A model generated the notes under the pieces. That model saw nothing but the letters and a program-made list of their open reading frames with translations. It was not told the DNA's origin and made no database searches. DNA of 63,643 bases, counting the filler, from Octopus bimaculoides (lineage: Eukaryota), in NCBI RefSeq assembly GCF_001194135.2. It is 6 parts of 6 records of this genome, joined end to end, with 100 filler letters (N's around TTAATTAATTAA, not from the genome) between each part and the next. Parts side by side here need not be neighbours in the genome. Positions count along the whole stretch, not along the records: positions 24,474 to 55,538 come from NC_068999.1; 5 more parts are not named here. One strand, written 5' to 3'. This document shows positions 1,677 to 54,400 of the stretch, piece after piece. How positions within the stretch are numbered: position 1 is the stretch's first letter; every line of letters begins with the position of its first letter. Both the position numbers and the translations under genes were made by a program.

Positions 1677-2447
1677 TCATCATTGTTGTCATCTAACGTC
1701 CGCTTTCCATGCTGGCATGGGTTGGATGGTTTGATTGGGAACTGGCAAGTTGGGAGGCTGCACCAGGCTCTAATCTAATTTGGCAAGGTTTCTACAGCTG
1801 GATGCTCTACCTAACACCAACTACTCCAAGAATGTAGCAGGTACTTTTTACATGCCACAAGTGCCAGTCAGGTGGCATGACATCAGCCATCTGTACGATC
1901 TCACTCAGTTCGATAAGTCTTCACAAGCACAGCATATCACTCAACAATTGAAGATTGCTTTTAAACAGACCTGTTATGTGACACTGGCATCAGTCACGAC
2001 TATGATCTCACTTAGCTTACCAGATCTTCTCAAGCGTGGCATATCTCCAAAGGTCTCAGTCACTTGTCATTGCTTCTGTAAGGCCCAACGTTTGAAGGTC
2101 ATGCTTCATCACCTCATCCCAAGTCTTCCTGGGTCTATCTCTTCCACAAGTTCCCTCCACGGTTAGGGTGTGACATTTCTTCACACAGTTGTCCTCATCT
2201 ATACACATCACATAACCATGCTAGCGCAGTCATATCTCTTGCACTCCACACTTGATGCTTCTTAAGTCCAACTTTTCTATAAGGATGATTACACTCTGTC
2301 ATGCATGCACACTGACATTACACATCCAGCGGAGCATACCAGCTTCATTTCTTTCAAGCCTATGCATGTCCTCAACAGTCACAGCCCTTGTTTCACTGCC
2401 GTGTAGCATAGCTGCTTGTACACAGGCATCACACAGTTTCCCACTTA
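1675..2447 (-). mobile_element. 5'-truncated RTE LINE (ORF C-terminus, 3' UTR, (GAT)n tail)
   Basis: Minus translation ..[58 protein letters not shown]. The tail abuts (TA)n. Confidence 0.88.
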
Positions 2448-4457: not shown

Positions 4458-4831
4458 TTCTGTAAGGCCCAACGTTTGAAGGTCATGCTTCATCACCTCA
4501 TCCCAAGTCTTCCTGGGTCTATCTCTTCCACAAGTTCCCTCTACAGTTAGGGTGTGACATTTCTTCACACAGCTGTCCTCGTCTATACACATCACATAAC
4601 CATGCTAGCGCAGTCATATCTCTTGCACTCCACACTTGATGCTTCTTAAGTCCAACTTTTCTATAAGGATGATTACACTCTGTCATGCATGCACACTGAC
4701 ATTACACATCCAGCGGAGCATACCAGCTTCATTTCTTTCAAGCCTATGCATGTCCTCAACAGTCACAGCCCTTGTTTCACTGCCGTGTAGCATAGCTGCT
4801 TGTACACAGGCATCACACAGTTTCCCACTTA
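4458..4831 (-). repeat. 374-bp near-identical copy of 2074-2447 (RTE fragment)
   Basis: Manual alignment shows 4 substitutions, no indels and an identical ORF-side breakpoint. Confidence 0.92.
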
Positions 4832-5264
4832 AAGGAAATGTGAAAATGATATACGAGTTGAGATGAAAATGAACCGGTAAGCAATGATTTATGCTCTGTT
4901 ATAAAATACAATGATTGCTATACATGAAGTAAAATAAATATAACAGGTTACAACAAAAATGTGTGAGAGACTTCATAGTCAGGTTGGATTGTTGATCTTG
5001 TAGACAAAGTTGATGTACTGTTTGGTGGTGTGTAGAGGCAGCCGTTGATCTGTTGGTTGTGTGGTGTTCATACAGCAATGATGTAGGCACATGTCTGGTG
5101 GAGATGAAAGCAGAGACTGGCTGGTGTCAGATACAACTCAAAATCAAAACATCTTGCACATAATGACAGTGTAAATCACTTCTGCTACAAACAGAGACAA
5201 GCATTTCAAAATAAACTTTATAATAGAAGAACATAGAGACAAAAGTGAGAGACTTCAGGTAAAC

Positions 5265-5312
5265 GTGTTTGTAACCAAAACAGTGTTTGTAACCAAAACA
5301 GTGTTCGTAACC
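5265..5312. repeat. 18-bp tandem repeat x2.7
   Basis: GTGTTTGTAACCAAAACA. Confidence 0.9.
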
Positions 5313-5809
5313 TTACTCACAGTCCATAGCAATACAAAGCATCAATAGATGCACACTTTGCCCAAAGCCAGATATTAAAAAAATATAGATAAGATACAAG
5401 TTAGCATAGAATCAATAGTCACACACTGTTCATAACAGCAAACATTATATACAACAATGTCCATAGCTGCATATACATAGTCCATAGCAACAGACAGAGT
5501 TTATATCTGTACATGCTGTCCTAGATACACATGGTTTCCTAAGCAACACTTATTAATTGTAGTCATGCTGCAAATTGTCTATAGATAAGAGACTGTGTCC
5601 ACAGTTACATTGTTTTATCTATGGAGTAGTGAATCACATGGAGACTCATTTTAGATATAGCTTTTCATCAGATAAAATATGAGAGGTGTTGCTTAATCTA
5701 TGGAGAAATAGTTAAACACACCATGTATGTATGCCTACTATACAGTTTACATATTATACAAGGATCAGCTGAAAAGTTCATAAGCTTACCAAGATATTCT
5801 CATAGGATG

Positions 5810-6310
5810 TGACCAAATGAGGTTCATTTTTCAACATAGTACCCCTTGTGGTCCATACACTTCTTTCATCAGTGTTGTAGTGCTCGGATCCCATTGGTGA
5901 AAAAGTTTTCATCCTGCTGCTCAAAAACGTCAACAGCAGAAATGACATCATCATCACTGCAATACTGGTTCTCAGCCAAGTATTTTTCATGCTGGAGTAC
6001 AGATGATAGTAAGATAGGGCCAGATCAGGAGGATGGGAAGCTAATCAACCAGTTCAAAGCCACAATCATCCACAGCAGCCATTGAAACCAATGACTTGTG
6101 TGCTGGAGCATTGTCCTAATGAAGCAATGAAACAAGGCCCCTTTCATTAATTTTCCTGGATGTTTGGACTTGATAGACTTTTGTAACTACCTCAACAAGC
6201 TGGAATAGTACTCTCCATTGATGGTGTGGCCCTTTTTAACGATACACAATAAATACAATGCCTTCAGCTTCCCAAATTATTGAGGCTGTCACCTTCTTTG
6301 TCTTTGCACA
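5810..6310 (-). pseudogene. Mariner transposase C-terminal relic
   Basis: Minus translation with stops and frameshifts: DNAPAHKSLVSMAAVDDCGFELV..PDLA..YYHL...GIRALQH..KKCMDHKGYYVEK. Confidence 0.8.
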
Positions 6311-6328
6311 GAATTATCCTTGTGCTAA

Positions 6329-6404
6329 ACTGTCATGTACAGAATTATAGGCACTGTACTGTCATGTACAGAATTATAGGCACTGTACTGTCATGTACAG
6401 AATT
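6329..6404. repeat. 29-bp minisatellite x2.6
   Basis: ACTGTCATGTACAGAATTATAGGCACTGT. Confidence 0.9.
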
Positions 6405-7109
6405 GTCAGTCCAAGTAGTTACAGATGGGATAGGGGTGAGGAGGGTGATTATAGTGAATGGTGAAGAAAAGTGGAGGGCAGCAGATGATGAGTTGGAAGG
6501 AAGGTGGGGGAGAGGAGGTGATGACTGACAGTACAGTAAGGGTGAGGAATAGCCAAAGAATAAAAGTATAGTATACAGGAGAAGGATGAGAGAAAATGTG
6601 ACGACAGGTCGGTGGTGGGTGGGGTAAATATCAAAAGTGTTAAGGTAGAGTAAGAGGCAAAACCTGTAGGGAGAGTGAAAGACAATGGTGATAGGGGTGA
6701 GTCAGCATAAAGCAGTTCTGAGAAGCAGACATAACTGGTAGTGCAGAAGGGTGATCAATTAAAGTTTGAGTAGAGAGAATATTTTTAGGGTGGATTTTTT
6801 TACAGTTGGATGCCCTTTTTGTTGCCAACACTCACCGATTTCCAAGTAAAATATTTTCCCATGGCCTGATACGTTTTCATAGAAGATTGATTGGAAAGGA
6901 CACCTGTCACTTGCACAACAGTGATACTTATTTGCAAGCATCATGCGATGTCAAGGAAAGGAGACAGTTACACATACATACACATGTATACGATGGACTT
7001 CTTCCCATTTCTGTCTACCACGTCCACTCACACACAACAAAGCTTTGGTCAAACCTGGGCTGTAGTAGAAGACACTTGCTTAAAGTGCCATGCAGTGGGT
7101 ATGTGTGTA

Positions 7110-7160
<51 letters not shown>

Positions 7161-7260
7161 NNNNNNNNNNNNNNNNNNNNNNNNNNNNNNNNNNNNNNNN
7201 NNNNTTAATTAATTAANNNNNNNNNNNNNNNNNNNNNNNNNNNNNNNNNNNNNNNNNNNN
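7161..7260. other. Artificial scaffold linker N44-TTAATTAATTAA-N44
   Basis: Exactly 100 bp. The palindromic 12-mer gives stops in all six frames. Identical at five sites. Confidence 0.95.
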
Positions 7261-7600
7261 TATAGCCTCGGGCCGACCAAAGCCTTGTGAGTGGATTTGG
7301 TAGACGGAAACTGAAAGAAGCCCGTCGTATATATATATATTTATTTATTAATTAATTTATTTATTTATTTATGTGTTTCTGTATTTATGTGTCTGTGTTT
7401 GTCCCCCCCCCCACCATCGTTTAACAACCGATGCTGGTGTGTTTACGTCCCCGTAACTTAGCGGTTCGGCAAAAAGAGAGCGATAGAATAAGTACTAGGC
7501 TTACAAAGAATAAGTCCTGGGGTCGATTTGCTCGACTAAAAGGTGGTGCTCCAGCATGGCCGCAGTCAAATGACTGAAACAAGTAAAAGAGTAAAAGATA
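7261..7600 (+). mobile_element. SINE family C (middle and 3' part)
   Basis: tatagcctcgggccgaccaaagccttgtgagtgg..gtttacgtccccgtaacttagcgg..ccagcatggccgcagtcaaatgactgaaac. Further fragments at ~1325-1475 (+), 7020-7100 (-), 21190-21270 (-), 29608-29765 (+), 35093-35240 (+), 41615-41810 (-), 57035-57193 (-) and 62330-62420 (+). Confidence 0.85.
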
Positions 7601-26125: not shown

Positions 26126-26907
26126 ATATATATATATATATATATATATANNNNNNNNNNNNNNNNNNNNNNNNNNNNNNNNNNNNNNNNNNNNNNNNNN
26201 NNNNNNNNNNNNNNNNNNNNNNNNNNNNNNNNNNNNNNNNNNNNNNNNNNNNNNNNNNNNNNNNNNNNNNNNNNNNNNNNNNNNNNNNNNNNNNNNNNNN
26301 NNNNNNNNNNNNNNNNNNNNNNNNNNNNNNNNNNNNATATACCCCCTCATTCTTTGGTCCCTCTGATTTCTTTCCCCCTCTCTCCTATTCCTTAGTCCCT
26401 TTGCCCTCTTCAACTCCTCCCCTCCCCTACAACACAATTGCTGTCTAGTTCAGGTATTGTCGTCCTTTTTCGGCCAGCCGCCTTGAGGTCGGTTGTATCT
26501 GTTCTGTTTTGTGCTGCTACCTGGTCTGTTAAAATTCTTCCGTTTCCATTTTCCTTGCACTAGCGTATTACATTCGTCTGATAGTCAAAAGACGCTGTTT
26601 GTTTTGTTTTATTTTTTTTGTAATTGTATAATTATTTTTGTTTTGTTGAAAGGTGTTTGTTCATTGTGCATGTATAATTCTATTTCATGAGTTATGTTCA
26701 TCTGATAATTGAAAGACCCTTTCTGTTGATTACTTGTGTTTGTATATGTACATTCATTTGCCTTGCTCAGAGGCTTAATGCTTTTAGCTTAAGTTACTGA
26801 CCCAAATGGTTTTGAGTAGTACCAGAGGTAAATAGGTGAAACTATGTGAACATTCCGGACTCCAACTGAAAAGGCAATTGGCTGCAAATGATCCATGTAT
26901 CTTGTTT

Positions 26908-30500: not shown

Positions 30501-33500
30501 GCAGCATTGCATTTCCTACACAAGCATTTCTTAAACAATCTGCCCTTACTCTGAGAGAGAAACCTTTTGCTGCCAGCAGAAGTAATTACTCACTGAACTT
30601 TTTTTCTATCCTGCCCTTACTCAAGCAAGTAGTTCTAAGAATTTTTCAGCATTCTATTGTGATAATTTCTTTAAAACAGCCACTCCTATCATTTTATGTA
30701 GTACATATGCTGAAACTGAACGACCTGCTGTTGAAATACAAGAAGAGGCTGAGAAACATTTGCATGAGAAAGGTATTCTAGAAAATGAAATTCCACTTAG
30801 TATTACTATTGGGCCTTTCTGGGTGACAACGTCGCATGTACGAGAAACTGTTTCGAAGAAGAAGAAAGCATTAACTATGGCACTCCTTGATTTACTTGCA
30901 AAACAGCTCAGCCAACAAACTGAGGAAGTATGTATTGATATTGCTTTCCCTATTTTCAGTTTTATGTTTGTCAATTTTAGTAAATTTGCTTATAAAATTG
31001 TTGTTCCAGTTTTTCTTGTCTTTGTTGTTCTGGTAAACCACATTGGGTTGTCACAAAACTAGAACGTATTCCAGTAATTCCATATTAAGTATATGGTTTG
31101 TTCATTTTGTAGAATGCTCCCCATTTTCTTTAGATCATTATTGTCATCATTATTGTCATGATTGTGGAGGAGGATGACAATGATCATCATCCTCCACATC
31201 ATTATCCTCCTGCTACATCTTGTCATTGATATTTACTTTTTAGTGTAATTTCCATAGATTATATTTGGAGGCTCTTTTAGACTGGTGTTCATCTTGAACT
31301 CATGCAGCTAATGAATTTAGGAACAACTGAGGTAGCCTCTACATGACTGCTGCTAGATCTGCTAGAAAAAGCAACCAGTTCTCCCTCAAATAAGTCTGAC
31401 TTAAAAGAGAGAATGCTCATTAGGTAATGTAAAAGGTGGGATATTTGTGACTGAAATGCCTTTGATTATAAGCCTGTTTGATCAAAGTTGACCAGTGGTC
31501 AAGCAATAACTATCTGGTGAAGGAATTCCTTAAGGCTGCAGTTCTGGGGGAAGAATGAAGAGGCAGTGTGGGTTTCAATGAGGAAAAGGAAGAGGTTGTT
31601 AACTGAGAAACAATTAAGCTGTGATCAAAACTAGTAAAAACAGAGAGAAGCAGTATTATGTGTGTGGCTTGATCGGACATGGATTAGCTTGATCGGACAT
31701 GGATTAGCTTGATGCCAATCAACTGGAGCTGCTTTTTTTTGGATAGGGTCTAGCATGCTTGTGTTTGAAGCAGCAGCAGCATCACACCTGATATGTAAGT
31801 AATACTCTAATGCTGTTCCAACTGTCTGAGAAAGCTTTATATGTGTGTGGTGCCTTGTTCTACTTTGGATATAATCCCAACGTGTCATGGATGGGGAGGG
31901 AATGTTGATTATTCAGGATTGAAAGTTCAAAACAAAAAAAATAGAAATTAATAGTTATCACCAAGCCAATATGGCAGTCCCAAAATTAGGACGAATGCTA
32001 CTGTCAATTAGCTCCAAGAGGCCATCGCCTCTAGCTAGCTATGTGACACACGAAGCCTGTGTCCTTTATAACCTTCGAACAGGGGAGGTCAGCAGCTTCC
32101 CCTTGCTGGTTTGGCATCTGCAGACTAGACTAGTTTCAGGGTATTGCCCCTTGTCAATGCAGAGCAGCCGAGCCCCAGCAGGCGTCGCTACTGACTGTCT
32201 GTAGGAAGATTATTTATCTAATTTCAGTGGAATACATCCACTGGTTTTCAGAAATAGAGTTATTAATATTTCTAAGTCTCTCTAAAGGAGACTACGGCAG
32301 CGGTACTGGAAATTAATAGTTATCGCCAAGCCAACATGGCAGTCCCAAAATTAGGACGAATAAAAAAATAGAATTATTTGAAAATTTATATAACATCATA
32401 GAAAATGGGGAAAAATTATGTTAAAATGGATGCCATCCAGCTTTCCTTGACTAGTAATTTTTTTTATCAACCATTTAACTGGGTGTCACTATTATTATTA
32501 TTATTATTATCAAGTCGTCTGCTTGATTTCTGTCTTAGAAACAAGTTAAGGTGAGAGGTCCATATTTGTTTTACGAGCAATTACTAAATATTTACTTTGA
32601 AGTATATTTGAATATTTATTATACAGTTAAAGCAGAGTTGTGTTACAACAAAACTGAGATAAGTTATGCACAAATTTAAAGGTAATAGAAATAAGTTTGC
32701 ATGTATAATCACCATAATATTTTTATTTGTTACCATTTTACTTATTGGTAGAATATTCTTCTTCCAGTTGTGAAACAAAAAGGGTAGAATATTCACATTG
32801 AATATAACTTGACTTATTTATATACAGGGTGAGCCAAAAGTAGCTATACACTTCGAAATTCTTTCATTTTATTACTTTTACGCTCATTTATTACAATTAC
32901 ATTTATGAAACACAGTTTAATCTCGTAAATGGTCGAAATATCCTCCGTCAACATGGGAACATTCCTCAAATGTCCCAGAACACTAACACGCAGCACATTA
33001 TTCATGGTACCTGTAAAAATCGAATAAGTTAATTTTAAAAGTGTTTACCTACTTTTGGCCCACCCTGTATGAGTCCTCACTTTTTTGGAGATGTTCCTTT
33101 CACCAAAATAACAAGCTTTGTTAATTGTTTTTTTAAAATCTGTTTGTATTAAATGATAATACCCGGGTAAAACTATAATTTATTTTGTTGAAGGTATGTG
33201 AAACTTTTAAACAAATCAGCCGAAAACAATCAGAAAAACCCAATACAATTGAGGAATTAGATGAGTTAAGGGAATGGATGAAGTCTATACCAGAAAAAAT
33301 TAAAGATCAACAAGTAAAGCATCTTATTCGAATCGTATATTTAATTTTATATAAGATTTAAAATAGTTTATATTATATTTCAGTTATTATGCAGTGTTGT
33401 GTGTGTATGTGTGCATGTGTGTATGCATGTGTGTGTGTGTGTGTGCATGCGTGTTTCATTATCAACACCAATATTTTATATCTACTTTTACGTTTGTGCA

Positions 33501-36500
33501 TAGGTTGAACAGTTTTCTATAGCTCAGCACCTTGCCACTTATGTTCCTTTGTCATCATAGGAAGGTTCAGCCTCCTGATATCAATCTCTAATGCAGCTTC
33601 CCTACATTTGGACTGCTTTGCACTTTTTTACTCAATTGTCATTTTTTTTTACATTTCATGCCAACTCAATCTTCTCCTTAGCATACAATCTGATTTCTCC
33701 AATACCTAGTTATTCTCTCAGCTCATTTCTTATTCATCATTCATGTACAATAATATTATGCATTCAAAGGCTGTCCATGGGACAGAAACCTTCATCACTA
33801 GACATGACAGATGTACGGTCATTGTACCAAAGCAATACTTTGAATTTCCCCATCCATTTTAGAAGCTTTGTTTGTACCAGTGAGAATTGTATGTTTGTTT
33901 ACACCATAAGAATGGACATTAATTGATGATGATATATATATATATATATATATATAAAATACAAAAATGGGACAAGAACGCAAAACATTCAAACAGTTGG
34001 GAGATACAAAAAAGGGACAACAAAACACCCAGGCAGATGATACAAAGAAAAAAAGGACGAGTCATTCAGAGTTTTCTATCCTCAGTCGAGTTCCAGATTA
34101 TCTTTGCAATTTTGGCTTGTTATACTTGAGATTGCTCCAATCTGGCCAACCCCAAGGAAAAACTAAGCTAAGAGCATTAGATTCCTTGGAAGAAAGCAGC
34201 AAATGTATACGAAAACAAGGATGGAAAAAAACAGAGAAATGTTTCACAAATACAAATTCAGTTAACAGGACATAACAACAGGTGTTTTTTGACTAAGGAT
34301 GAATTAAATTAAGCTAGCATGTGTGGAAAACCAGTCGAAATTGCAAAGATAATCTGGAACTTGATTGAGGATAGAAAACTCCGAATGACCTGTCCTTGTT
34401 TGGTTATGGAACATTCATATTTTATAATCATTTTTTAAAACTAAGGGTTATATTATAGGTTTAAAACTTGCTGAGTGATACTCAGCATGGCTTTCGACCA
34501 GGTAGGAGCTGCCTGACCCAAATCTTACAACATTATGACTGGGTATTGAGGCAGTTACTCAACAACTCAAATGTGGACGTAATATACCTTGATTTTACAA
34601 AAGCTTTTGACAAAGTGGATCATGGTGTGATATGCCACAGACTGCAGGATCTTGACATAGCTGAAAAACTTGGAGAGTGGTTACATGACTTTCTGAAAGA
34701 TAGAAGACAGGCAGTAGTGGCAAATGGAGCCACCTCTATGAAAACACAAATAGTGAGCGGTGTTCCACAGGGCACTGTCTTGGGACCACTGCTTTTTAAA
34801 GTGGTCCGCTCAGATATGCCCTCAAGTGCCCGGATAGCCACCCTTGCAAGCTTCGCAGACGATACAAAAGTCTCGCAGAAAATACAGAACCCCAGTGATG
34901 TTGCACATCTGCAGCAGGAGTTGGACTCAATTTACAAATGGGCTGAGGATAATAATATGCAGTTTAATGCTGAAAAATTCCAAGCCCTGCACTACCAACA
35001 TCCAAAACTGAATATGAAACTTACAGAGTACACTGGTCCGCAGGGAATTTCAATCCCAGAGCCTAAATCAGTGAGGGACCTGGGTATCGACATGTTTACG
35101 TCCCCGTAACTTAGCAGTGCGGCAAAAGCGGCCGATAGAATAAGTACTAGGCATCCAAAGAATAAATCCTGGGGTCAATTTGCTTGACTAAAGGCACTGC
35201 TCCAGCATGGCCACAGTCAAATGATTGAAACAAGTAAAAGAGTATATATTTATATATATTATTTATATATATATATTTATATGCATATATACAGGGGTTG
35301 GACAAAATAATGGAAACACCCAGCATCATAGCATCATAATTTTGAAATATCTATAAAACCATCAAAAGCATGTTTATTTTTATGTTTTTCGATTTATTAT
35401 TAGTGTTGCTTAATATGTTTTGCTAACATTGCTGTTTCTTTTCAGATATCATCAGAAAGAGGTAATTAAAATTCATTAAAATGACAGATCTATCGGACTT
35501 TCAAAGAGCTGAAACTGTTGGTCCTTGTATGGCAGGTGCGAATGTAACAAAAACAGCCAAAATGTTTGGTGTATCAAGAAGTACTGTCTTGAAAATAGTG
35601 ACAGCATTTGAGAAAAAGGGAAAAACCTCCTCATCAAAACAAATTTCCAGAAGAAAACCAAAACTTTCAGATAGGGGCCGTCAGAATCTTAAAGAAATTG
35701 TTAGAAAGGATCCCAAAAGTACAGCTCCCAAAGTTACTGCAGAGCTTTATGACCACCTCGAGAACCCAGTTTCCACAAAAACTGTTCACTCGGAGCTGCA
35801 CAAAGCTGAATTTCACGGATGGGTTGCAATCAGAAAACTACTCCTTTCAAAAACAAATGTTGCAAAGTGTTTAGAGTGGAGTAAAAACCTACAGAATTGG
35901 TCCCTAGAGCAGTGGAAGAATGTTATTTTCTCGGACGAGTCATCCTTTACCTTATTTACAACCACCAGCTGAGTATACATGTGGAGACAGCCAAAAGAAG
36001 CATTTGACCCTGACTGCCTTCTTCCAACTGTTAAACATGTAGGAGGATCTGTGATGATTGGGGTGGGGCTATATCTTGGAAATCCACCGGCCCAATGGTT
36101 TCCCCTCATCGTAGAATTAATAGTCAAGACTATTTAAGCATTTTATCTGATCAAATTCATCTTATGGTGGTGGAACTGTTTCCGGAGGGAAACACAATCT
36201 TTCAGGATGATAATACACCAGTTCACACAGCTAAAGTTGTTACTGAATGGCACTAGGAACATTCTAGTGAAGTTCAACATCTTATCTGGCCACTATAGTC
36301 CCCAGATCTCAATATTGTTGAACATTTATGGTGCATTTTCGAAAAACAAGTAAGGAATCGATATCCTTCACCATCATCACTACAAGAACTGGAGACTGTT
36401 TTAGCTGAAGAATGGACAAAAATTGCTTTGGAAATAATTCAAACTTTGTACAAGTCCATACTTCATAGAATTCAAGCTGTAATTACTGCCAAATGTGGTC

Positions 36501-36579
36501 ATACCCCATATTAAAATAAATTTGTTTGAAATTTTAAGGTGTTTCCATTATTTTGTCCAACCCCTGTATATACATACAT

Positions 36580-36631
<52 letters not shown>

Positions 36632-36865
36632 CCAAAGTTTTAAATTTTTACATTTACGAGAGAGATTTGATGCTAATATTAGCGTCAAATCTCTCTCTTA
36701 AATGTAAAAATTTAAAACTTTGGATATATAAACAAGGAGAACAATCCCTAAGGAGTCTAATTTAGACTTTTTTGCGGTGAAATCTCCTGCTATATTGGTA
36801 ACGATTACATAGTTTACTATGAAAAATTATATATATATATATACATATATGTACATATACATACA

Positions 36866-36904
<39 letters not shown>

Positions 36905-39900
36905 ACACACATACATACATATAAACATGCATGCACATATGCTTATATATACATTTATGTGTGTATGTGTTTAAAAAAAAACTTTTAATTTGGTTTAAGG
37001 GTAGCATTCTGAGGATATACATGTATAAGTACAAAAAGAAAAGGTTTTGTGTTATGTGCACGGAGTATATGGAATAAAATGAAATGAAAAAAAATTTAAA
37101 TGTTAGATAGGAATAAAATTGCAAAAAGATACAGAGATTAAGATAAAATGTGATCCTCTCATTCATCTGTCTCTGTACAAAAATGATTCACAAGAAACAA
37201 TTAGGTAATTAGAAGAAAAAGATAAAATAATGAAACAAAACAACAAGTAGTTGTTTTATAAGGTTATTTGAAATGTAAACTATAACAATCCATATAAACT
37301 AGTGCTAGTCTCAGTTTGATGAATTCAAAATGAAACCAGTTTGTGTGATGAGAAGAGAAGTGAATTATATTTCAGGGCATGATTTTGTGGAAGTAATGCT
37401 TTAATCTTTATTTTTTACAGGAACAAATTAGTAAAATAGTTGTGGACTATGGATTGTTGGAGAACTTTTTCTATAATCTTCCCATTGATGACTTCAATAA
37501 TTTGTAAGTGTGGTTTCTCTTTTACTTTACTTCTGTTTTGGCTGTTATTTGAAGAAACATCTAATATACAGTTATGTATATTCTTTTTTGGAACTGCAAC
37601 ATTTAGTATTACAAAAGTCTATGATTTTGGTGTTGATTCAATGTTACAATTGAAATTAATGATTAATAGCAAATAATTATTTTTTCTCGTGAGATTTTTA
37701 ACTCGGATTGTCACAAATGTTCTGTAGTCAAGAAAAAAAGATGCCTTAATAAGCTTTGCAAAGCCTCCAAAGCTAATGAAATCAAAATGGTTGAGTTTGG
37801 TGACTGTTTCTATCGGATACGTAGAAATTTAGAGGTTAAGTTACTGCTCTTATATGAGCCATATACTTACTTTTCTACTCTAGGCACAAGGCACAAAATT
37901 TTTTGGGATGGAGCTAGTTGATAAGATCAACCCCAAAACGCAACTGGTATCTAATTTATTGACCCTGAAAGGATGAAAGGCAAAGTTGACCTTGGCGGAA
38001 TTTGAACTCAGAACATAAAGACAGATGACATACTGCTAAGCATTTCACCTGGCATGCTTGCTGCCTTCTTATATGGGACATATTACCTTATGGTTTCCAG
38101 AACCTGGGACAGAGCAAATGAAAGCTGGTAAACTTACTCCATTGTCCTGAACTGGCTGCTGATGCGTTCATACTTGGTGACTTCTTAGTAGTATCATGTG
38201 GCAAAATAGAGAATAAGAAAGAATTTAAGAAAATAGGTTACTTATGTGTAAGGATATTGTTATCCCCAACATATAACAATACCTAGGATGGTAAGTGAAG
38301 ATATAATCTATGACAACTCATTTAACCCATGCCAGTATGAAAAGACTTCTTTTAAGATATTTGCACCACTGGCTCTATTACTGAGGATGACAATTTAGTT
38401 TATCAACCATTTTATTGAAATTGCTTGTTATATGAGCGAGTGCTGAGAAGTTTCTGTCTTTGGATAAAAGAAAATACAGGAGGATCAGTTAATTATGATT
38501 TTATTCAACATATTCCTTTCTCAGAGTCACACACTTATTGCAGCAGTCCTTCAGTTTCTTTAAGCCCTGTAAAAAATTCTTGGAAGGATGGGCCTCCAAC
38601 CAGGCCTCTGTAGCAGCAATCACTCCTGAATCAGTGAAATTTCATTCCCTTGCAATATTTCTTCAGTTGTGGAAAGAGGTGATAGTTATGGATGGGAGCA
38701 AAGTCAGGAGAGAAAGGTGGATTGTTTACCAGTTTGAAGCCAAAGTTGTGTATTTTCCATAAAGTTTCATGTGCTGGTGCAGTGTCCTGCAAAAACAGGA
38801 CACCATGGTTCAGTTTTCTACAATGTTTCTGCTTCAAAACTTCATGTAGTTTGTCCACCAGAGACATGTTGTATTCTGTGTTGATGGTGCAACCCTTTAG
38901 CAGGTATTTTATGAGAAGTAATCTGTTTTTGTCCTAGAATGCTGAAGGCAGAACCTTTCCAGCTGATTTCTGTGTCTGAAACTTCTTGGGACGTGGTGAA
39001 CTGCTGTGGCATCACTCCATTGATTGCTGCTTGGTCTGGGGATCATAATGAGGAAGCCAAGTTTCATCCATACTGACTAAACAAGCCATAAAATCTGCCT
39101 CTCCTACTGCAAACTGGTCCCAAATTGCCTTTGCTGTCATCTGGTGTGCTTCTGATCTGTGTTCAAGAATTTTGGTATCCATTTTGTAGAAAGTTTTTTT
39201 TTCTCATGTCCAGAATGTTATAGATGATGTAACCAACTCTTTCAAGGTGACCCCCTGAGTCTCAGCTATAACTTTAGCTGAAATCTGGTAGTCCTCAAGA
39301 ATCATGAGATGCACAGTGTCAGCTTTGTCCTCTGTGGTCATGGAAGTTGGCTCTCCTGACTGAGGTTCATCTGTAACCTTGAAATAACCAGTTTGAAGCC
39401 TTAACAACCAGATTTTCACTGTGGAATAAGGTGGGAAGCTATCTTTCATCTTGCCATGGATTTCTGTCACACCTTTGCATTGCAAAAAAAGGAACTTCTT
39501 GACCATCTATGCTTCAATTTTACCAAAATCCACTGTAGAAGATGCCATCAGGCATTAAATCTGCAAAAAAAGAGAAAAATACATTGTATGCCATCGTGAT
39601 TTTTTGCATATCTTCTAAATAGTGTCCTACTTCACCTATGAAAGGTAACCCTAACCCTTTTCTAATACCCTTAAAGGTAGGAACTTTTCAGCACCTCCTC
39701 GTAACTGCACCACAAACCTGTATGTAGTCCAGCACAAAGATAGAAAATAGAAAACCCCTATGTTGCATGTTTTTTTTTTTACTAATCCGAGGCTTTTGTT
39801 ATTGTTTGTAGATGGGCTATGATTGGATGGCCTCTGAAAATTGAGAAACAAACTGAGACGGTTTTGATAAACCATGAAGCTGATGAAGAGCGGTTTCGTA

Positions 39901-45473: not shown

Positions 45474-48400
45474 CGCGCGCGCGCACACACACACACACAC
45501 ACACTCTATCTACTGTCTCAGTAACGAGTATGAGCATTGCTTGTTAATGATTCACAAAGCAAAAATTAGTTTTTAGGCTTGCAGCTTTTAATCTAATTAT
45601 CATGTAATTGTCTTTGTTAAATGCGGAATCATGACACTTGGTTTTGTGTATTGACATGTGTCTTTGAAACCATCAATACAAGGACATTTCTTATATGAGT
45701 GGCAAACATATGTGCTTTCTAGTGGTTGAGGATCTACTACTAGCTTGTTTTCATTCATGTAACCATGAGTGGGTAAAAAGAGAAGGGAGATTACTATGTG
45801 CCCATGACCCAGAGATCAAAGTGTGTTGATCATTCTTCCAGATATTCTTTTTTGATGTCTTTGTGTGTAGTGGTAGCACCATCCCATATGTAAAAGTATT
45901 TTATTGAGAGACTCACATAAATTTTGTAGGTAGTCAGCATTTGTTCGAAGCTGAAGTACTCTCTAAAGAAGAAGTTTTAGTCTTTTAAAGAAGCAGTTTT
46001 TGCTATGTTGTGAATGTAACGTCACCAGTAGAGGTTATAAATGATGACAAGGCTTAGTTTTTGTGTTGACTTTGAGGATTTTAATTGCTTCTCTATTTCA
46101 TATGTGTAGTGTCTCTTTGTGCTGTTGAAGGAAACAAGATTGTCATATTTCCATTGGAGAATATTTGGGGGATCTTTATTTGTGGAAGAAATAATGCATG
46201 TTTGATTTATCATGTTTCGATTGCTTGTGGATGTCATCTGTATGTGAAAGAGTGAAGAGTGGTATCACCTGTATAGCATAAATAAACCTTGTCTATTATT
46301 ATTACTTCCAGTTCCCATTTATTTATCTTTTTGTCGCAGACAGGGTTTTGTTTTGTAATTAAATACATCACTGATACAGTTGATCTAAGATGAAAATAGG
46401 AAGAGTATTTAGCCATAAAAACCATGCTAAAAAACATCATGTACAATAACAGGGATTGGCTGTGCATATTTATCACAAACCAGGTAACAAAGGATTGACA
46501 AAGATTCATTAAATTCATCCAGCATGGAAGAAAAGGACAGTGTGGTGATGATGAACGATGATGATCCTACCATTTATCATAAATGTTGTCATTTATAAAT
46601 GTATGAGCTCTCTAAAATTCAGCTTGATATTTAATTTTATTACTGACATGCTGTCTTTGGAATTATATTTCAATGTATTTTTATGCTTGGTTAATTTAAA
46701 TATTTCGAATTAAGGATGTAATCTGTCTTCTTATTTTCTTAGTGTACTTAATGAAGTCACTGAAAGTTTTTCAGGAAAAACTGTAATGAGTTCCAATAAT
46801 ATCCTTATACATTCTCTAATTCTATTTTTAGTATGATAAACTTCATCTGATGGTAAAAGAATTTGAACCATTTCGCAGCCTTTGGATTACAGCATCTGAC
46901 TGGCAGAGATGGCATGAGAGCTGGCTGAATGATCCACTGCTGTCTATCAGTGCTGAAGATGTTGAAAAGAATGTTCTGGATTCTTATAAAATTATGCATA
47001 AATCAGTTAGAATATTTCAAGACAGTCCTGGTATGTAATTTTAATTCTCTTTATATGTTCATTTAGTTCAAAACTTTGTAGTCATGACCAAACTGAAGTT
47101 CTGCTACCCCTCTTGATTTATCAATCATTTATTTGAAGTTTTGACTTGACAATATTGAAATTATTAAAAGCTGATTAGAATTGGTAAAAACAGCTGATGT
47201 TGAAGCTTGCATTAGTTGTAATATTAAGTAATGAAGATACTGTGATATAGTATGGCAAATAGTAGATAAGATACTATGTGATATAGTAATATTAAGTAAA
47301 GAAGATACTATGTGATATAGTATGGCAAATAGTAGATAAGATACTACATTAAATAACAGAAAAGCAAAGTTGTACAAAGTGATTCAGAAGTCCTTTCATA
47401 ATTTAAATTATATGTAATTTATCTATTAGGCATGATTGAAACAGCATTAAATTAAAAATTTTATTTCTTTCATACATAACACATATATATATATATATAT
47501 AGTGTTGTTGGCTTTATGCAAGAGAGAAGTACCACTGATGCTATTTTCCTATTGATGCAGCTGTAGGAGAAATATTCAGCTGAAAGTAAACCATTGTATT
47601 TGGTATTCATTAACCTGGAGAAAGTCTTTAACAGTGTCCCTTCTTTTGTGATTTGCTGGTGGTCCTGGAACAAGCTAGGGGAGATGAATGGTTTGTGAAA
47701 TCCATATCAACCATATGCAGGGTTACTATCAGTAAGATGAGAGTTAATCATGAGATCCCCAATGAATTTAGAGTATAGGTAGGAGATCATGAAGGCTCAG
47801 TTTTCAGTCTGCTTCTATTCATCATTTGTGTTCCAGGTCATAACAGAGGAATTTAAGACCATCTGCGCTTGGAAGCAATTATATTATGGTCTCTGCCTAT
47901 GCTCCACAGGCAGTGCTGGCTGATGACCAGAAGGACTAATTCTACGAGGTCCTCCTGCAGACTACCTCAGTGACAAGTGACAGTAACTTGGTAATTGTTG
48001 CTGGTGACTTTAATGGATATGTTGGGTAGCGGTCTCATGGATTCCATGGAGTGCATGGTGGTTATGGCTTTGGCCCTAGAAATGAGGAGGGAACAAAACT
48101 ACTGGAGTTCTGTGATGCAAATGATCTAATGATCTGCAACACTAACTTCAGAAAATCAGCCAGCTTCCTAATCATTTCTCAGTCTGGTAGGCAAATAAAC
48201 CAGATCGTTTACCTCCTCACCAGGCAATGAGATAGGCAGAGGCTCACAAATGTAAAGTCTTTCTCAAGTGAAGAGTGTACACCCCAACATAGGCTACTTG
48301 TTTGTGACTCTAGAATTAGGTCTAGAAAGGCTTGGAGAAATAAGCCACACTTGACAAGAAAATTATGGAAGCTCAAGGACCCAGCAAGTCATCAAGAATT

Positions 48401-51400: not shown

Positions 51401-54400
51401 TGTAAATCAATTTTTATGAAACCATGGATAGATCAAAATTTGTGTTGTTTATGAATATGAGTTCCATCATAGAACTAATGCATTCCAGACAGCTCAAAAC
51501 ATCAAAGTGGTGTCTGGTGAAGATGTGGTGAATGAGGGCACTAGACATCGATGGTTTGAGAAGTTCTGGTCTGGTGACTTTACTCTTGAAAATCAGCCCC
51601 GTGGTAGACCTGAGACCAAGGTGGATAACGAAGAGCTGGAAACACCTCATACTATGTGTGAGTTAGCAGTTTGATGTTTCGATTCCAACTGTATTGGACC
51701 ATCTGAAACAAATCGGCAACGTAAAGGAGCTGGACAAGTGAGTACCACATGAACTGAGCAAGCATCAACTGACACATCATCTTGAAAATTGCTGTTCTTT
51801 ACTGTCACAACATAAAAGTGAACCATTTTGGCATCATATTGTTATGTGTGATATAAAATGGATTCTTTTCAACAATAGCAAGCATTTTGTATGGTAGTTA
51901 GATAGAGATGAAGTGCTAAAACACAATCCAAAATATAATCATCATCATCATCATCGTTTAACGTCCGCTTTCCATGCTAGCATGGGTTGGACGATTTGAC
52001 TGAGGACTGGTGTAACCCGAAGGCTGCACCAGGCTCCAATCTGATTTGGCAGAGTTTCTACAGCTGGATGCCCTTCCTAATGCCAACCACTCCGAGAGTG
52101 TAGTATGTGCTTTTACGTGTCACCTGCACGAAGGCCAGTCAGGCGATACTGGCAATGGCCACGCTCAAAATGGTGTATTTTATGTGCTACCCGCACAAGA
52201 ACCAGTCCAGGGGCACTGGCAACGATCTCGCTCGAAAGTCCTTACATATGCCACGGGCACAAGTGCCAGAAAGATGACGCTGGGCACAGGTGTCATCCCG
52301 ATTTCGCTTTCGTTTGCCCCAATAAGTCTTTCATGTCCAATGAAGGAGACGACATTGGCATGGGTGCCAGTCGTCGAATTTAGTTCGGTTTTGATTTCAC
52401 TTGCCTCAACAAGTCTTCACAAGCGGAGTTTAGTGTCCAATGAAGGATATTTACTGGAAAAAGGCTAATGGTGTCCGTTTGGTGGTCCAGCTCTAGTGTC
52501 ATCCACTACAGCTTCATGAAACCTGGTAAATCAATTACAGCAGATGTATACATCAACCAATTTGTTGAAATGATGAGTGAACTTCTAATTAAACAACCAA
52601 GACTGGTCAATAGAGATATGCAAATTCTCTTGCAAGACAATGCTCGACCACATGTTGCACAAAGAACACTACTCAAGTTACAGGAATTAAACTTGGACAT
52701 ATTCTATCATCCACCATATTCACCAGACGTTGCACTAACTGACTATCACATTTTCTAGGCATTAGACGACTTTTTGCAAGTAAAAAACTTCAAATCTGAT
52801 GCAAAAACAGCCTTTCATGAATTTATCACCTCTTGCTCTCCAGAATTCTTTGCTGCCAGCATTAATAAGCTATCGATAAAATGGCAAAATTGTGTTAATT
52901 TAGGTGCATACTTTAACTGCATTGCTTTTTGTTCTCTGTTTATTTTCATGGAATCAATTTCTACATTTTCTAATCAATTTTAGTTATCTGATGAGCTTGG
53001 TTTTCAAGTGCGACCTAAAAGCAATTTAACTTTTAGTAAATGTCTTGAAATGAAGCTGCAAGACTATATTGAAGTGATTGCTAAAGTTGCTGAAGTAGCA
53101 GGGAAAGAGTATTCAATTGAACAGGTAAGACAAATGTTTGAATTAAATGATTAATGATATGAAGTCATACAATGACTATATTTGAGAAAAAAAAAAAAAT
53201 ATATTGTAACTTATATAGTCTCTTCTTTTATACACACTCACATCATGCACCTACGTTTATATAAACACTTCTATTTATATATGTACTTATCTCTTATTTG
53301 TATGTGTCTTTTCATCTATCTTTTTGTCTGTCTATACATACTTGCGTGATACATACATGAATTCATATATTATCATCGTCATTATCATCATCATCATTGT
53401 CTAATGTCCATTTTCTATGCTGGCATGGATTGGATGGTTTGACATGGAGTTGGCCAGCTGGGAAGTTGTCCAGGCTCTACTCGTCTGTGGTGTCATGCTT
53501 TCTATGCCTGGGTGCCCGTTTTAACATCAACCACCCTACAGAGAGTGCTGGGTACTTTTTGCATGCTGCTGGCACCCGTAAAGGACAAGCCTGTATGGAT
53601 GGATGGCAGTGATTTTACTCAGCTTGATGCTCCTTCTCAACTACAGAAAATCCCCACAACTCCTCCTGGTCCCATTTCCAGTGAAGCCCAACATCTGAAG
53701 ATACTTTCTCACCACTTCGTCCCATGTCTTCCACATGTTCCTCCCACTTTTAAAGTTTGGCACTTTTCTACACTTCTGTCCTCATCCATGTGCATCACAT
53801 GACCAAACCAGTGCAAACCTTGCACTAAATAGATGAAGTAATGACATCAATAAGTAAATTGAATCTTGGTAGGGCACCTGGAAAGGATGGAATTTGTGCT
53901 GAGGTCTTGCGATTTGGTGGTAATTACATCACACAGTCCCTTCATGAACTTATTAGTGCAGTCTGGAGGGATGGTGCAATCCCTAAGGACTGGAAAGATG
54001 CAATTATTCTTCCTCTATATAAAGAAAAAGGAGCCAGAACAATGTGTGGTAACTACAGAGGTATTTCTCTACTATCAGCTGCTGGCAAGGTTCTGGCAAA
54101 TATTCTTCTTACCCGTCTGAATGGGTGTCTCGTAAATGATGTCCTATCTGGATCTCAATGTGGCTTCCGATCTGGTAGAGGGACAATGGATATGATTTTC
54201 ACAGCAAGACAGATGCAGAAGAAGTGCTATGAGCAGAATATGGATCTTGTCCAGGTTTTCATTGATTTAACAAAGACCTTTGATACTGTAAATAGGGCCT
54301 TTCTATGGAAAATACTTGGCAAACTTGGATGTTCAGATCACTTTGTATCTAGAATTAAATCATTTCATGATGGGATGGAGACTTGGGTCAATGTTGGTGG

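What the first reader, a model, noticed from the sequence alone, without database searches (positions are those of the whole stretch)
31935..32373. Candidate cephalopod retrozyme: TSD-flanked 1.15-mer of a 365-nt hammerhead-containing unit in a dynein intron
Seen: a non-coding 415-bp insert with 53-bp direct repeats 365 bp apart, a 12-bp duplication (AAAAAAATAGAA) on both sides, and a full type I hammerhead on the minus strand. Stem I can extend further: GGC/GCC after an internal loop, then UGCUGG/CCAGCA, with a CAAUA loop II as expected for loop-bulge tertiary contact. The insert ends do not coincide with the predicted cleavage site (32122/32123). Established: non-LTR retrozymes in metazoans are small type I hammerhead-bearing repeats that yield circular RNAs and are thought to be mobilised in trans. 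Inference: terminal redundancy unlinked to the cleavage site is what reverse transcription running more than once round a ~365-nt circle would leave. The 3-nt GAA/UUC overlap at the left junction fits microhomology priming. The ribozyme is antisense to the dynein pre-mRNA, so it would not cut it. I do not know whether this family is already described.
Basis: partly seen in the sequence, partly recalled or inferred. Interest (0 to 1): 0.88.

Follow-up and report, generated by a model that had tools for sequence, protein, structure and literature searches.

The report
Hammerhead retroelement insertion in dynein intron
A 415-bp piece of a very abundant, non-coding 365-nt repeat carrying a variant self-cleaving (hammerhead) ribozyme motif inserted into a dynein intron in one species' lineage; it is a good new example of a known class of mobile elements (retrozyme / Penelope-associated repeats), not a new kind of system.

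Summary
The structural observation is real. It is a 415-bp insert (31947-32361) of 1.14 units of a 365-nt sequence, flanked by an exact 12-bp duplication. Five runs from two related species show the empty site with one copy of the target, so this is a true lineage-specific insertion. The unit belongs to a family at about 10^4-fold depth in at least four related species, and most copies continue head-to-tail through this copy's right end. The left end is a recurrent family terminus next to varied AT-rich flanks, so ends are not freely permuted. The minus-strand "hammerhead" has the full type I architecture but a non-canonical core (UUGACAA, U3-A8, plus G10.1-U11.1), and Rfam misses it. It is still non-random (0 hits in 300 shuffles). 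It is the most conserved block of the unit, and its frequent substitutions fall in loops. U3-A8 cores are already reported in Penelope-like-element hammerheads. The monomer RNA is unusually stable (z = -5.9). RNA-seq shows low, strand-symmetric signal and no cleavage or circle evidence. Verdict: a new member of the non-LTR retrozyme / PLE-associated hammerhead repeat class. Reverse transcription of a circle is plausible but unproven against a multimeric linear template. The host taxon could not be verified.

The parts
31935..31946 (.). Left target-site duplication AAAAAAATAGAA
   Evidence: Exact 12-nt direct repeat. The empty site in organisms B and I has a single AAAAAATAGAA followed directly by the right flank.
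32362..32373 (.). Right target-site duplication AAAAAAATAGAA
31947..32361 (-). The whole 415-bp insertion (1.14 units). The element sense strand is the window minus strand.
   Evidence: Absent at the orthologous site in 5 runs of 2 other species. Read depth is thousands-fold above the flanks.
31947..32311 (-). One complete 365-nt unit. Its 3' end in element sense (...GAUAACUAUUAAU) is at 31947.
   Evidence: Repeat spacing of 365. 31947, equivalent to 32312, is a recurrent terminus with varied AT-rich flanks in organisms B, C and D.
32312..32361 (-). 5'-truncated upstream partial unit (the last 50 nt of a unit), which forms the terminal redundancy with 31947-31996
   Evidence: 48/50 identical to 31947-31996, and the right copy carries the family-consensus bases. 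3020 reads continue past 32361 into 31997-like sequence, so 32361 is a truncation point and not a family end.
31944..31946 (.). GAA microhomology shared by the target end and the unit-internal sequence (32309-32311)
   Evidence: The repeat D1 begins at 31944, inside the TSD.
32104..32180 (-). Type I hammerhead-like motif with its extended helix I
   Evidence: Only descriptor hit in the piece and 0 in 300 shuffles. It is the most conserved block across organisms A-D. No Rfam hit.
32151..32157 (-). Catalytic box UUGACAA (the U3-A8 variant of CUGANGA)
   Evidence: Read directly. No variant at >=6% in any of 4 species. Subfamily consensus sequences read UUGAUAA and UUGAAAA. U3-A8 covariants are reported in PLE hammerheads (PMC4209133).
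32138..32150 (-). Helix II GGGG/CCCU (G10.1-U11.1) with loop 2 CAAUA. The family majority has CAACA, and some subfamilies have CAAAUA with a C11.1.
32123..32137 (-). GAAA box, helix III ACU/AGU with loop AGUCU (near-palindrome ACUAGUCUAGU), and C17. Predicted cleavage is between 32123 and 32122.
   Evidence: The self-dimer of this segment is -12.3 kcal/mol against 0 for the monomer. A 5-nt shorter form (GAAACUAGUC) occurs in 27-28% of organism-A reads.
32117..32122 (-). Helix I 3' strand UGCAGA, pairing with UCUGCA at 32163-32158
   Evidence: 6-bp helix I.

Best explanation
The insert is a retrotransposed copy of a non-autonomous, non-coding, hammerhead-bearing repeat of the metazoan non-LTR retrozyme / Penelope-like-element (PLE)-associated type. 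The element's sense strand is the window's minus strand.

Shown:
- A staggered break in an A/T-rich intronic target gave a 12-bp TSD.
- The inserted DNA starts at a recurrent family 3' end (...CUAUUAAU, at 31947), with a 3-nt GAA/UUC microhomology to the target.
- It runs through one full 365-nt unit and then 50 nt further into a second unit.
- The template was therefore longer than one unit, and its ends were not the ribozyme cleavage site.

Inferred:
- Head-to-tail source copies are transcribed.
- The type I hammerhead (U3-A8 core, weak near-palindromic helix III, so probably active mainly as a dimer in multimeric RNA) cuts after C17 (32123). This releases 365-nt monomers that host ligase can circularise.
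- A reverse transcriptase/endonuclease supplied in trans nicks AT-rich DNA, primes on the AU-rich stretch of the RNA, and copies more than one turn of the circle or more than one unit of a multimer. A PLE is the favoured source.
- The insertion is an old, decaying copy with no evident function in the dynein gene.
For: Insertion and TSD:
- Exact 12-nt duplication and 365-nt periodicity.
- Empty site with a single target copy in organism B (X28, X30, X31) and organism I (X27, X29).

Family:
- Raw DNA reads reach about 6,700x over 32001-32154, against 0-3x in the flanks. 17,108 of 12.9 M reads map.
- The family is present in organisms A, B, C and D.
- Head-to-tail continuity: 592 'goes back 365' reads, and 3020 reads with 94% agreement continue past 32361.
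- Preferred 3' end: varied AT-rich flanks 'before 32312/31947' in 18 (B), 21+9+7 and 15+3+4 (C), and 10+2 and 4 (D) contigs. No comparable terminus appears at the cleavage site.

Hammerhead:
- The descriptor hit is unique, with 0/300 shuffles.
- It has helix I of 6 bp, helix II of 4 bp, and a short palindromic helix III, as described for metazoan type I HHRs (PMC4209133).
- The U3-A8 covariant is known in PLE HHRs (PMC4209133).
- Over 32104-32172, all five substitutions reaching >=25% in any species (32111, 32143, 32165, 32170, 32172) lie at unpaired non-core positions. My own arithmetic: 20 of 69 positions are of that kind, so about 0.002 by chance.
- N7 varies (C/U/A) while U3 and A8 are kept in subfamily consensus sequences, and GAGG/CCUC replaces GGGG/CCCU.
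- The organism-A majority consensus keeps the motif.

RNA and other features:
- Circular MFE is -127.9 against -95.7 +/- 5.5 for shuffles, z = -5.85, and GC is 46%.
- No tRNA head and no protein homologue of the only ORF.

Literature:
- The published retrozyme life cycle proposes target-primed RT of circRNA giving tandem cDNA, with PLEs as the likely mobilisers (PMC7229834).
- PLE insertions are 5'-truncated partial tandems with a (TA)n target bias (PMC8557442).
- Vertebrate retrozymes are related to PLE pLTRs (10.64898/2026.07.22.740005).
Against: - No Rfam hammerhead match.
- Two canonical core positions differ, and G10.1 pairs with U rather than C in this copy and in the main subfamily, so activity may be low or absent. 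Self-cleavage is untested.
- RNA-seq (X49, X50) shows only about 430-490 mapped reads per roughly 12-13 M, about 35-40 times rarer than in DNA. Both mate orientations are equal, there is no pile-up of ends at 32122/32123, and head-to-tail joints are no more frequent than in DNA. The library type is probably unsuited to circles.
- A recurrent fixed 3' end is not what random priming on a circle predicts.
- No autonomous partner element was identified, and homology to a PLE pLTR could not be tested.
- The distribution of array lengths is unknown. No long reads are served, and the loose-end tables are capped.
- Compensatory changes are seen only in 30-nt consensus strings, and their linkage within single copies was not verified.
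- The host taxon is not verified.
Confidence: 0.72

Rival explanations
1. Same element class, but no circle is involved. The template was a linear multimeric transcript of a genomic tandem array, or two RNAs joined by template switching. The 1.14-mer is then the ordinary PLE-style product: a full copy preceded by a 5'-truncated copy (pseudo-LTR). The hammerhead may process transcripts, but it is irrelevant to the terminal redundancy.
For: - PLE insertions are typically 5'-truncated partial tandems (PMC8557442).
- The family is mostly head-to-tail in the genome, so multimeric transcripts must exist.
- There is a fixed 3' terminus with variable 5' extent.
- RNA reads contain head-to-tail joints at about the same rate as DNA reads.
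- No circle evidence was found.
Against: - An active hammerhead would tend to cut multimers to monomers.
- The two copies of the redundancy differ only by two transitions, both in the left copy relative to the family consensus. That fits identical units at insertion, as a single circle would give, but it does not exclude a young array.
- Published retrozymes accumulate mainly as circles (PMC7229834).
Confidence: 0.35
2. The hammerhead-like motif is an inactive relic, or merely a conserved structural module. The family is an ordinary 'unclassified SINE' or satellite-like repeat, moved by a LINE or amplified at the DNA level.
For: - The core is non-canonical, there is a G-U at 10.1-11.1, and Rfam gives no hit.
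- RNA signal is low and strand-symmetric, with no cleavage ends.
- The target is A-rich.
- LINE-type RT fragments lie nearby in the window.
- Octopus annotations list hundreds of unclassified SINE families (PMC13282606), if the host is indeed an octopus.
Against: - No tRNA/5S-like head and no poly(A) or simple-repeat tail.
- Multi-unit head-to-tail organisation.
- The motif block is the best-conserved part of the unit across four species. Substitutions are confined to loops, N7 is the only variable core position, and U3/A8 co-vary as a pair.
- The motif is not expected by chance.
- The architecture matches canonical metazoan type I HHRs, including CAA(A)UA in loop 2 and a palindromic helix III (PMC4209133).
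Confidence: 0.15
3. Not a mobile-element insertion: a local duplication, an assembly artefact or a chance repeat.
For: None beyond the short length of the repeats.
Against: - The precise empty site in five runs of two species.
- Thousands-fold read depth.
- Contigs of organism A reach both junctions.
Confidence: 0.01

Closest known systems
Metazoan non-LTR retrozymes (Cervera & de la Pena 2020, PMC7229834; coral, mussel and axolotl families)
   Same: - A non-coding unit of about 170-400 nt (here 365) with one type I hammerhead.
- Thousands of copies, arranged head-to-tail.
- GC below 50%.
- TSDs longer than 4 bp.
- A highly self-paired monomer RNA.
- A proposed target-primed RT of a circular RNA, yielding insertions of more than one unit.
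   Different: - The core is U3-A8 with G10.1-U11.1 instead of the canonical C3-G8 and G-C.
- Abundant circRNA is not demonstrated here, and the RNA signal is low.
- There is a preferred 3' insertion end next to AT-rich flanks.
- No cephalopod family is mentioned in the papers I could search, and the host taxon is unverified.
[quoted passage not shown] 2021, PMC8557442)
   Same: - U3-A8 covariant cores occur naturally (Schistosoma Cercyon, about 1,300 hits).
- Helix III is weak and palindromic, implying dimeric action.
- Insertions are 5'-truncated partial tandems with variable TSDs and a (TA)n / AT-rich target bias.
   Different: - PLE min-HHRs usually lack helix III and loop-loop contacts and have a longer helix II. 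This motif has the canonical 6-bp helix I, 4-bp helix II and CAA(A)UA loop.
- No RT/GIY-YIG ORF is linked to this unit in the data available.
Schistosoma Sm-alpha and newt satellite 2 hammerhead repeats (cited from my own knowledge and from PMC7229834 / PMC4209133)
   Same: - Units of about 330-365 nt with a type I hammerhead, both tandem and dispersed.
- The ribozyme is weak as a monomer and active as a dimer.
   Different: - No detectable sequence homology was tested.
- The + strand look-alike of the Schistosoma helix II (GUCCCAAAAUUAGGACGAAU, 31981-31996) lacks a CUGANGA box and is not conserved in organisms B-D.
SINEs
   Same: Short, non-coding, very abundant, with TSD-flanked insertions, a fixed 3' end and variable 5' truncation.
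   Different: No tRNA/5S/7SL head, no A-rich or simple-repeat tail, multi-unit head-to-tail organisation, and a ribozyme motif.

Membership tests
Type I hammerhead ribozyme | Conserved box C3-U4-G5-A6-N7-G8-A9 | tested here: not met
   The box reads UUGACAA. Positions 3 and 8 are changed together to U and A, which keeps the 3-8 pair. This covariant is documented in PLE hammerheads (PMC4209133).
Type I hammerhead ribozyme | G12-A13-A14 plus A15.1-U16.1, and a cleavable N-U-H triplet | tested here: met
   GAAA at 32137-32134 and GUC at 32125-32123.
Type I hammerhead ribozyme | Three helices in type I topology (open helix I, closed helices II and III) | tested here: met
   Helix I is 6 bp with extensions, helix II is 4 bp (with a G-U closing pair), and helix III is 3 bp with a 5-nt loop.
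Type I hammerhead ribozyme | Match to the curated covariance models (Rfam Hammerhead_1, Hammerhead_3, HH9, HH10, Hammerhead_II) | tested here: not met
   No hit at E<=1 on 31 kb or at E<=10 on 500 nt.
Type I hammerhead ribozyme | Conservation and covariation consistent with the fold | tested here: inconclusive
   The block is invariant at >=6% across 4 species except at loop positions. GAGG/CCUC versus GGGG/CCCU, and CUACA...UGUAG versus CUGCA...UGCAG, are seen only in 30-nt consensus strings, and their linkage was not verified.
Type I hammerhead ribozyme | Site-specific self-cleavage | not testable with these tools
   RNA-seq shows no pile-up of ends at 32122/32123, but the libraries are not suited to this.
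Non-LTR retrozyme | Small (about 150-450 nt) non-coding unit carrying a type I HHR, with no LTR/PBS/PPT | tested here: met
   A 365-nt unit whose only ORF (77 aa) has no homologue. The HHR is a variant, see above.
Non-LTR retrozyme | Many genomic copies in head-to-tail arrangement | tested here: met
   Depth about 10^4-fold over the flanks, 592 'goes back 365' joint reads, and 3020 reads running on into the next unit. Array lengths were not determined.
Non-LTR retrozyme | TSDs longer than 4 bp flanking insertions | tested here: met
   A 12-bp TSD, with the empty site seen in two species.
Non-LTR retrozyme | Stable, highly self-paired monomer RNA and GC below 50% | tested here: met
   z = -5.85 and GC 45.8%.
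Non-LTR retrozyme | Expression as abundant unit-length linear and circular RNA | tested here: inconclusive
   RNA reads are present but rare and strand-symmetric. Circles cannot be told apart from tandem DNA templates with these data.
Penelope-like element (as a pLTR or non-autonomous derivative) | Sequence homology to the terminus of an RT/GIY-YIG-encoding element in the same genome | not testable with these tools
   No host genome assembly or repeat library is searchable here. Pattern scans of the metagenome and viral contig collections found nothing.
Penelope-like element (as a pLTR or non-autonomous derivative) | Insertion anatomy: a 5'-truncated partial tandem and an AT-rich / (TA)n target | tested here: met
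   A 50-nt partial unit lies upstream of a full unit, the target is A/T-rich, and other copies' flanks are AT-rich or (TA)n.
tRNA-derived SINE | A tRNA-like head with A and B boxes, and a simple-repeat or A-rich tail | tested here: not met
   ARAGORN finds nothing. Only a GTTCGAA B-box-like heptamer is present. There is no tail: the A-run is target DNA, because it is present at the empty site.

The most novel reading that the evidence does not exclude
This family would be a recently active retrozyme whose naturally U3-A8 hammerhead, set in an otherwise canonical type I scaffold, is catalytically competent. This locus would then be a clean genomic footprint of rolling reverse transcription of a 365-nt circRNA: an empty site, a 12-bp TSD, a 3-nt microhomology, 1.14 turns, and ends unlinked to the cleavage site. 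Priming would occur at one preferred AU-rich site by a PLE-type endonuclease/RT that targets AT-rich DNA. That would give the first taxon-wide system (if the host is a cephalopod, the first there) in which the priming rule of retrozyme mobilisation can be read directly from thousands of insertions.
Probability: 0.3. Interest if true: 0.65.

Novelty: new member of a known kind. Interest (0 to 1): 0.45.

Why it matters
How non-LTR retrozymes are mobilised is still a model rather than a demonstrated pathway. The open questions are the template form, the priming site and the helper element.

This locus has a verified empty site, an exact TSD, a microhomology junction and a length of more than one unit. 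The family also shows a recurrent 3' end beside AT-rich flanks. Together these give concrete, countable predictions for a genome-wide survey: a fixed 3' end, a spectrum of 5' truncations, and identical units within an insertion.

It would also extend the natural U3-A8 hammerhead core from minimal PLE motifs to a canonical-architecture ribozyme. Current covariance models miss such ribozymes, so similar families are probably under-annotated and filed as 'unclassified SINE' or 'unknown'.

For the dynein gene itself the insertion looks neutral: it is intronic and antisense.

Tried and rejected
- **Rfam** on the whole piece and on the insert alone gave no hammerhead hit. All matches were spurious miRNA or snoRNA hits on simple repeats.
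- **The + strand look-alike** of the Schistosoma helix II plus GAAA (31981-31996; the family consensus turns GAAT into GAAA). I rejected it because there is no CUGANGA box upstream and the hairpin is not conserved in organisms B, C and D, where the sequence is AGAAAAATAGGACGAAT.
- **CUGAUGA...GAAA at about 25479 (-)** fails the helix requirements.
- **The 77-aa ORF as a handle** to fetch other copies found no homologues.
- **Exact-pattern scans** of the metagenome and viral contig collections with the ribozyme segment gave 0 hits.
- **tRNA-like head**: none.
- **The share of organism-A copies ending at 31947/32312** could not be quantified. The loose-end table shows only six entries per run, and the expected uniform class was not listed. 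I can only say that fewer than 59 reads appear at 32312.
- **A 5'-truncation depth gradient.** I rejected it because the drop at 32175 is an alignment break. 2708+980 reads continue there with a consistent, slightly different sequence.
- **Host identification** via the dynein exon: the database gave no organism names, and the best identity was 81%.
Full report
**1. The observation**

- A 53-nt direct repeat (31944-31996 and 32309-32361, 51/53 identical) with start-to-start spacing of 365.
- An exact 12-nt AAAAAAATAGAA at 31935-31946 and 32362-32373.
- A 415-bp insert (31947-32361), that is, 1.14 units of 365 nt.
- Nothing else in the 31-kb piece resembles the unit.

The genomic context also holds.
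- The ORF fragment at about 30760-30920 (+) matches residues 777-826 of axonemal dynein heavy chain 1.
- The fragment at 33185-33310 (+) matches residues 828-863.
- DHC_N2 exons follow on the + strand at 46850-47038 and 54924-55268.
- The insert therefore lies in the intron between two consecutive dynein exons, and the ribozyme strand is antisense to the gene.

**2. The hammerhead**

On the minus strand the motif reads:

5'-UCUGCA UUGACAA GGGG-CAAUA-CCCU GAAA CU-AGUCU-AG UC | UGCAGA-3'

Its parts are:
- Core: 32157-32151.
- Helix I: 6 bp, extended by GGC/GCC and UGCUGG/CCAGCA. MFE folds reproduce these extensions.
- Helix II: 4 bp.
- Helix III: 3 bp.

- The CUGANGA box is UUGACAA (C3->U and G8->A).
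- The closing pair of helix II is G-U.
- Rfam finds no hammerhead, even at E<=10 on 500 nt.

The motif is nevertheless not a chance look-alike. A descriptor allowing either a C3-G8 or a U3-A8 core, with all three helices, GAAA and NUH, hits only this site in the real piece and nothing in 300 shuffles.

The literature supports this reading. Cervera & de la Pena (PMC4209133) describe exactly this U3-A8 covariation in Schistosoma PLE hammerheads (about 1,300 hits). They describe canonical metazoan type I hammerheads as having a 6-bp helix I, a 4-bp helix II, and a 1-2-bp helix III capped by a small palindromic loop, acting as dimers. Here ACUAGUCUAGU is a near-palindrome. Its self-dimer is predicted at -12.3 kcal/mol, against no structure for the monomer.

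**3. It is a real, lineage-specific insertion**

I laid other species' contigs on the left flank plus only 14 nt of the insert. Each run gave a single-copy contig that aligns up to 31940 and then continues TAGAATAATTTGAAAATTTATATAACATCA. That is the window's right flank with one mismatch.
- Organism B: three runs from two samples.
- Organism I: two runs.

The ancestral site had one copy of AAAAAATAGAA. The 415 bp and the second copy of the target are an insertion in the lineage of organism A. The flanks of B and I differ from A by about 8% (25 mismatches plus small gaps over 339 nt).

The two copies of the terminal redundancy differ by two transitions. Both are in the left copy, and the right copy carries the family-consensus bases. 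This fits identical copies at insertion followed by a few percent of decay.

**4. The family**

Abundance:
- Raw DNA reads of organism A (about 1% of run X32) give depths of roughly 2,000-7,600 across the unit, against 0-3 in the flanks. 17,108 of 12.9 million reads map.
- Contig word-depths tell the same story in organisms A, B, C and D.
- This indicates copy numbers of the order of 10^4.

This copy differs from the organism-A majority at 25 of 365 positions (6.8%). About 8% of mapped reads are >=99% alike to it over their aligned part, so it belongs to a minor subfamily.

Head-to-tail continuity is the rule.
- 592 reads show a 'goes back 365' joint.
- On a short stretch, 3020 reads with 94% agreement run past 32361 into sequence equivalent to 31997 onward.
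- The right end of the insert is therefore a truncation point and not a family end.

The left end is different. At 32312, which is equivalent to 31947, contigs break into varied AT-rich or (TA)n flanks (agreement 0.46-0.54).
- organism B 18 contigs; organism C 21, plus 16 within 2 nt; organism D 10, plus 2.
-, at 31947: organism C 15, plus 7 within 2 nt; organism D 4.
- No comparable terminus appears in the ribozyme stretch, including the cleavage site.
- In organism A fewer than 59 reads show this terminus, so most units there are internal to multi-unit arrangements.

The pattern is a preferred 3' end (element sense) with variable 5' extent. This is the signature of target-primed reverse transcription. 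It also fixes the template strand as the ribozyme strand.

**5. Is the ribozyme under constraint?**

Across organisms A-D, the 32104-32164 block shows only three variants at >=6% in any run:
- 32111, in the AAA internal loop of helix I.
- 32143, in loop 2.
- A 5-nt indel at 32122 that converts CUAGUCUAGUC to CUAGUC. This is a shorter but still palindromic helix III, present in 27-28% of organism-A reads.

Extending to 32172 adds 32165, 32170 and 32172. All three are unpaired in this copy, and 32170 creates extra pairs in the majority form (UUGGC/GCCAA).

All five substitutions that reach >=25% in some species fall in the roughly 20 unpaired non-core positions out of 69. My own arithmetic puts that at about 0.002 by chance.

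Loose-end consensus strings from divergent subfamilies read as follows:
- UUGAUAA and UUGAAAA. N7 varies while U3 and A8 are kept.
- GAGG...CCUC in place of GGGG...CCCU.
- CCCC, which restores G10.1-C11.1.
- Loop 2 as CAAAUA, the loop of the Schistosoma ribozyme as I recall it.
- CUACA in the helix I 5' strand and UGUAG in its 3' strand, which would be a compensated G-C to A-U change.

These strings are only 30 nt long, so I could not verify that the paired changes sit in the same copies. I rate covariation as suggestive and not shown.

**6. The RNA**

The monomer as cleavage would release it (365 nt, minus strand) folds as a circle at -127.9 kcal/mol, against -95.7 +/- 5.5 for dinucleotide shuffles (z = -5.85). 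Helix I closes the molecule, and GC is 46%.

Two raw RNA-seq runs of organism A give about 430-490 mapped reads per roughly 12-13 million, about 35-40 times rarer than in DNA.
- The two mate orientations are equal.
- There is no accumulation of ends at 32122/32123.
- Head-to-tail joints are no more frequent than in DNA.

The family is therefore transcribed at least at background level. These cDNA libraries cannot show or exclude self-cleavage or circles.

**7. Mechanism**

Shown:
- A staggered break at an A/T-rich intronic site, giving a 12-bp TSD.
- A cDNA that starts at the family's preferred 3' end with a GAA/UUC microhomology.
- Copying of a full unit plus 50 nt of the next one.
- Ends unrelated to the cleavage site.

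It follows that the template exceeded one unit and was not the linear ribozyme-cleaved monomer.

Two templates fit:
- A circularised monomer copied for 1.14 turns. This is the published retrozyme model, "tandem cDNA copies" from a target-primed circRNA (PMC7229834).
- A linear multimeric transcript. This is the usual explanation for PLE partial tandems (PMC8557442).

I favour the first only slightly. The recurrent priming site beside AT-rich flanks fits an endonuclease with an AT-rich / (TA)n preference plus annealing to the AU-rich ...CUAUUAAUUU stretch. That points to PLE machinery, because PLEs show a (TA)n bias and vertebrate retrozymes are related to PLE pLTRs (PMC8557442; 10.64898/2026.07.22.740005). 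No helper element could be identified here.

**8. Comparison and novelty**

By function and by nearly all testable defining features, this is a non-LTR retrozyme / PLE-associated hammerhead repeat.

Features that fail or remain open:
- The canonical core box, replaced by the documented U3-A8 covariant.
- The Rfam match.
- Demonstrated cleavage.
- Abundant circRNA.

It is not a tRNA-type SINE. There is no tRNA-like head, no tail, and the organisation is multi-unit.

None of the retrozyme or PLE-hammerhead papers I could search mentions cephalopods. A detailed Octopus vulgaris repeat annotation lists 893 'unclassified SINE' families and active Penelope elements but no ribozyme-bearing family. 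I could not confirm that the host is a cephalopod, because run organisms are coded and the protein search returned no organism names.

**9. Verdict**

This is a new member of a known kind.

Noticed in passing
Seen in reads, not in the window: abutting window positions 32151, 32169, 32311, 32334 and 31994 (behind), and 32321/32323 (= 31956/31961) and 31970 (before): A perfect 28-nt palindrome, GGTTCGTCCATCGATCGATGGACGAACC, adjoins family copies at several different unit positions in organism A (45-337 reads each). It could be a foldback or inverted junction, a PLE-type 'tail', or the end of another element. It remains unexplained.
   Followed up: partly
window 31981-31996 and 32346-32361 (+): GUCCCAAAAUUAGGACGAAU closely resembles helix II plus GAAA of the Schistosoma hammerhead, and the family majority even has GAAA. 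But there is no CUGANGA box upstream, and organisms B-D have AGAAAAATAGGACGAAT instead. It is probably fortuitous.
   Followed up: yes
window 31667-31706: An exact 20-nt tandem duplication (GCTTGATCGGACATGGATTA x2). The contigs of organisms B and I show about 22 nt of gaps across 31681-31712, so they appear to carry one copy.
   Followed up: partly
window 34468-35109 (+) and 53841-54431 (+): Reverse-transcriptase (RVT_1) ORF fragments with LINE-like motifs (FADD) lie in other dynein introns. Transposase-like ORFs (about 35481-35972 +, 38631-39506 -, 52468-52758 +) look like Tc1/mariner remnants.
   Followed up: partly
window 31308-31538 and 32771-33078: Two other stretches flanking the insert are moderately repetitive in all species (read depth about 10-35x against about 0-1x for the flanks; contig depths in the hundreds to thousands). 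These are other repeat families.
   Followed up: no
window about 25479 (-): CUGAUGA...GAAA occurs here but fails the helix requirements of a hammerhead. It lies inside a 116-aa ORF that looks like a retroelement remnant.
   Followed up: yes
window 36565-36979 and 33399-33465: TA/TG-rich simple repeats produce all the sub-threshold Rfam 'miRNA' matches. These are artefacts of low complexity.
   Followed up: yes
window about 26150-26330 and about 27350: Runs of N (assembly gaps) next to (TA)n repeats, visible as X runs in the ORF translations.
   Followed up: no
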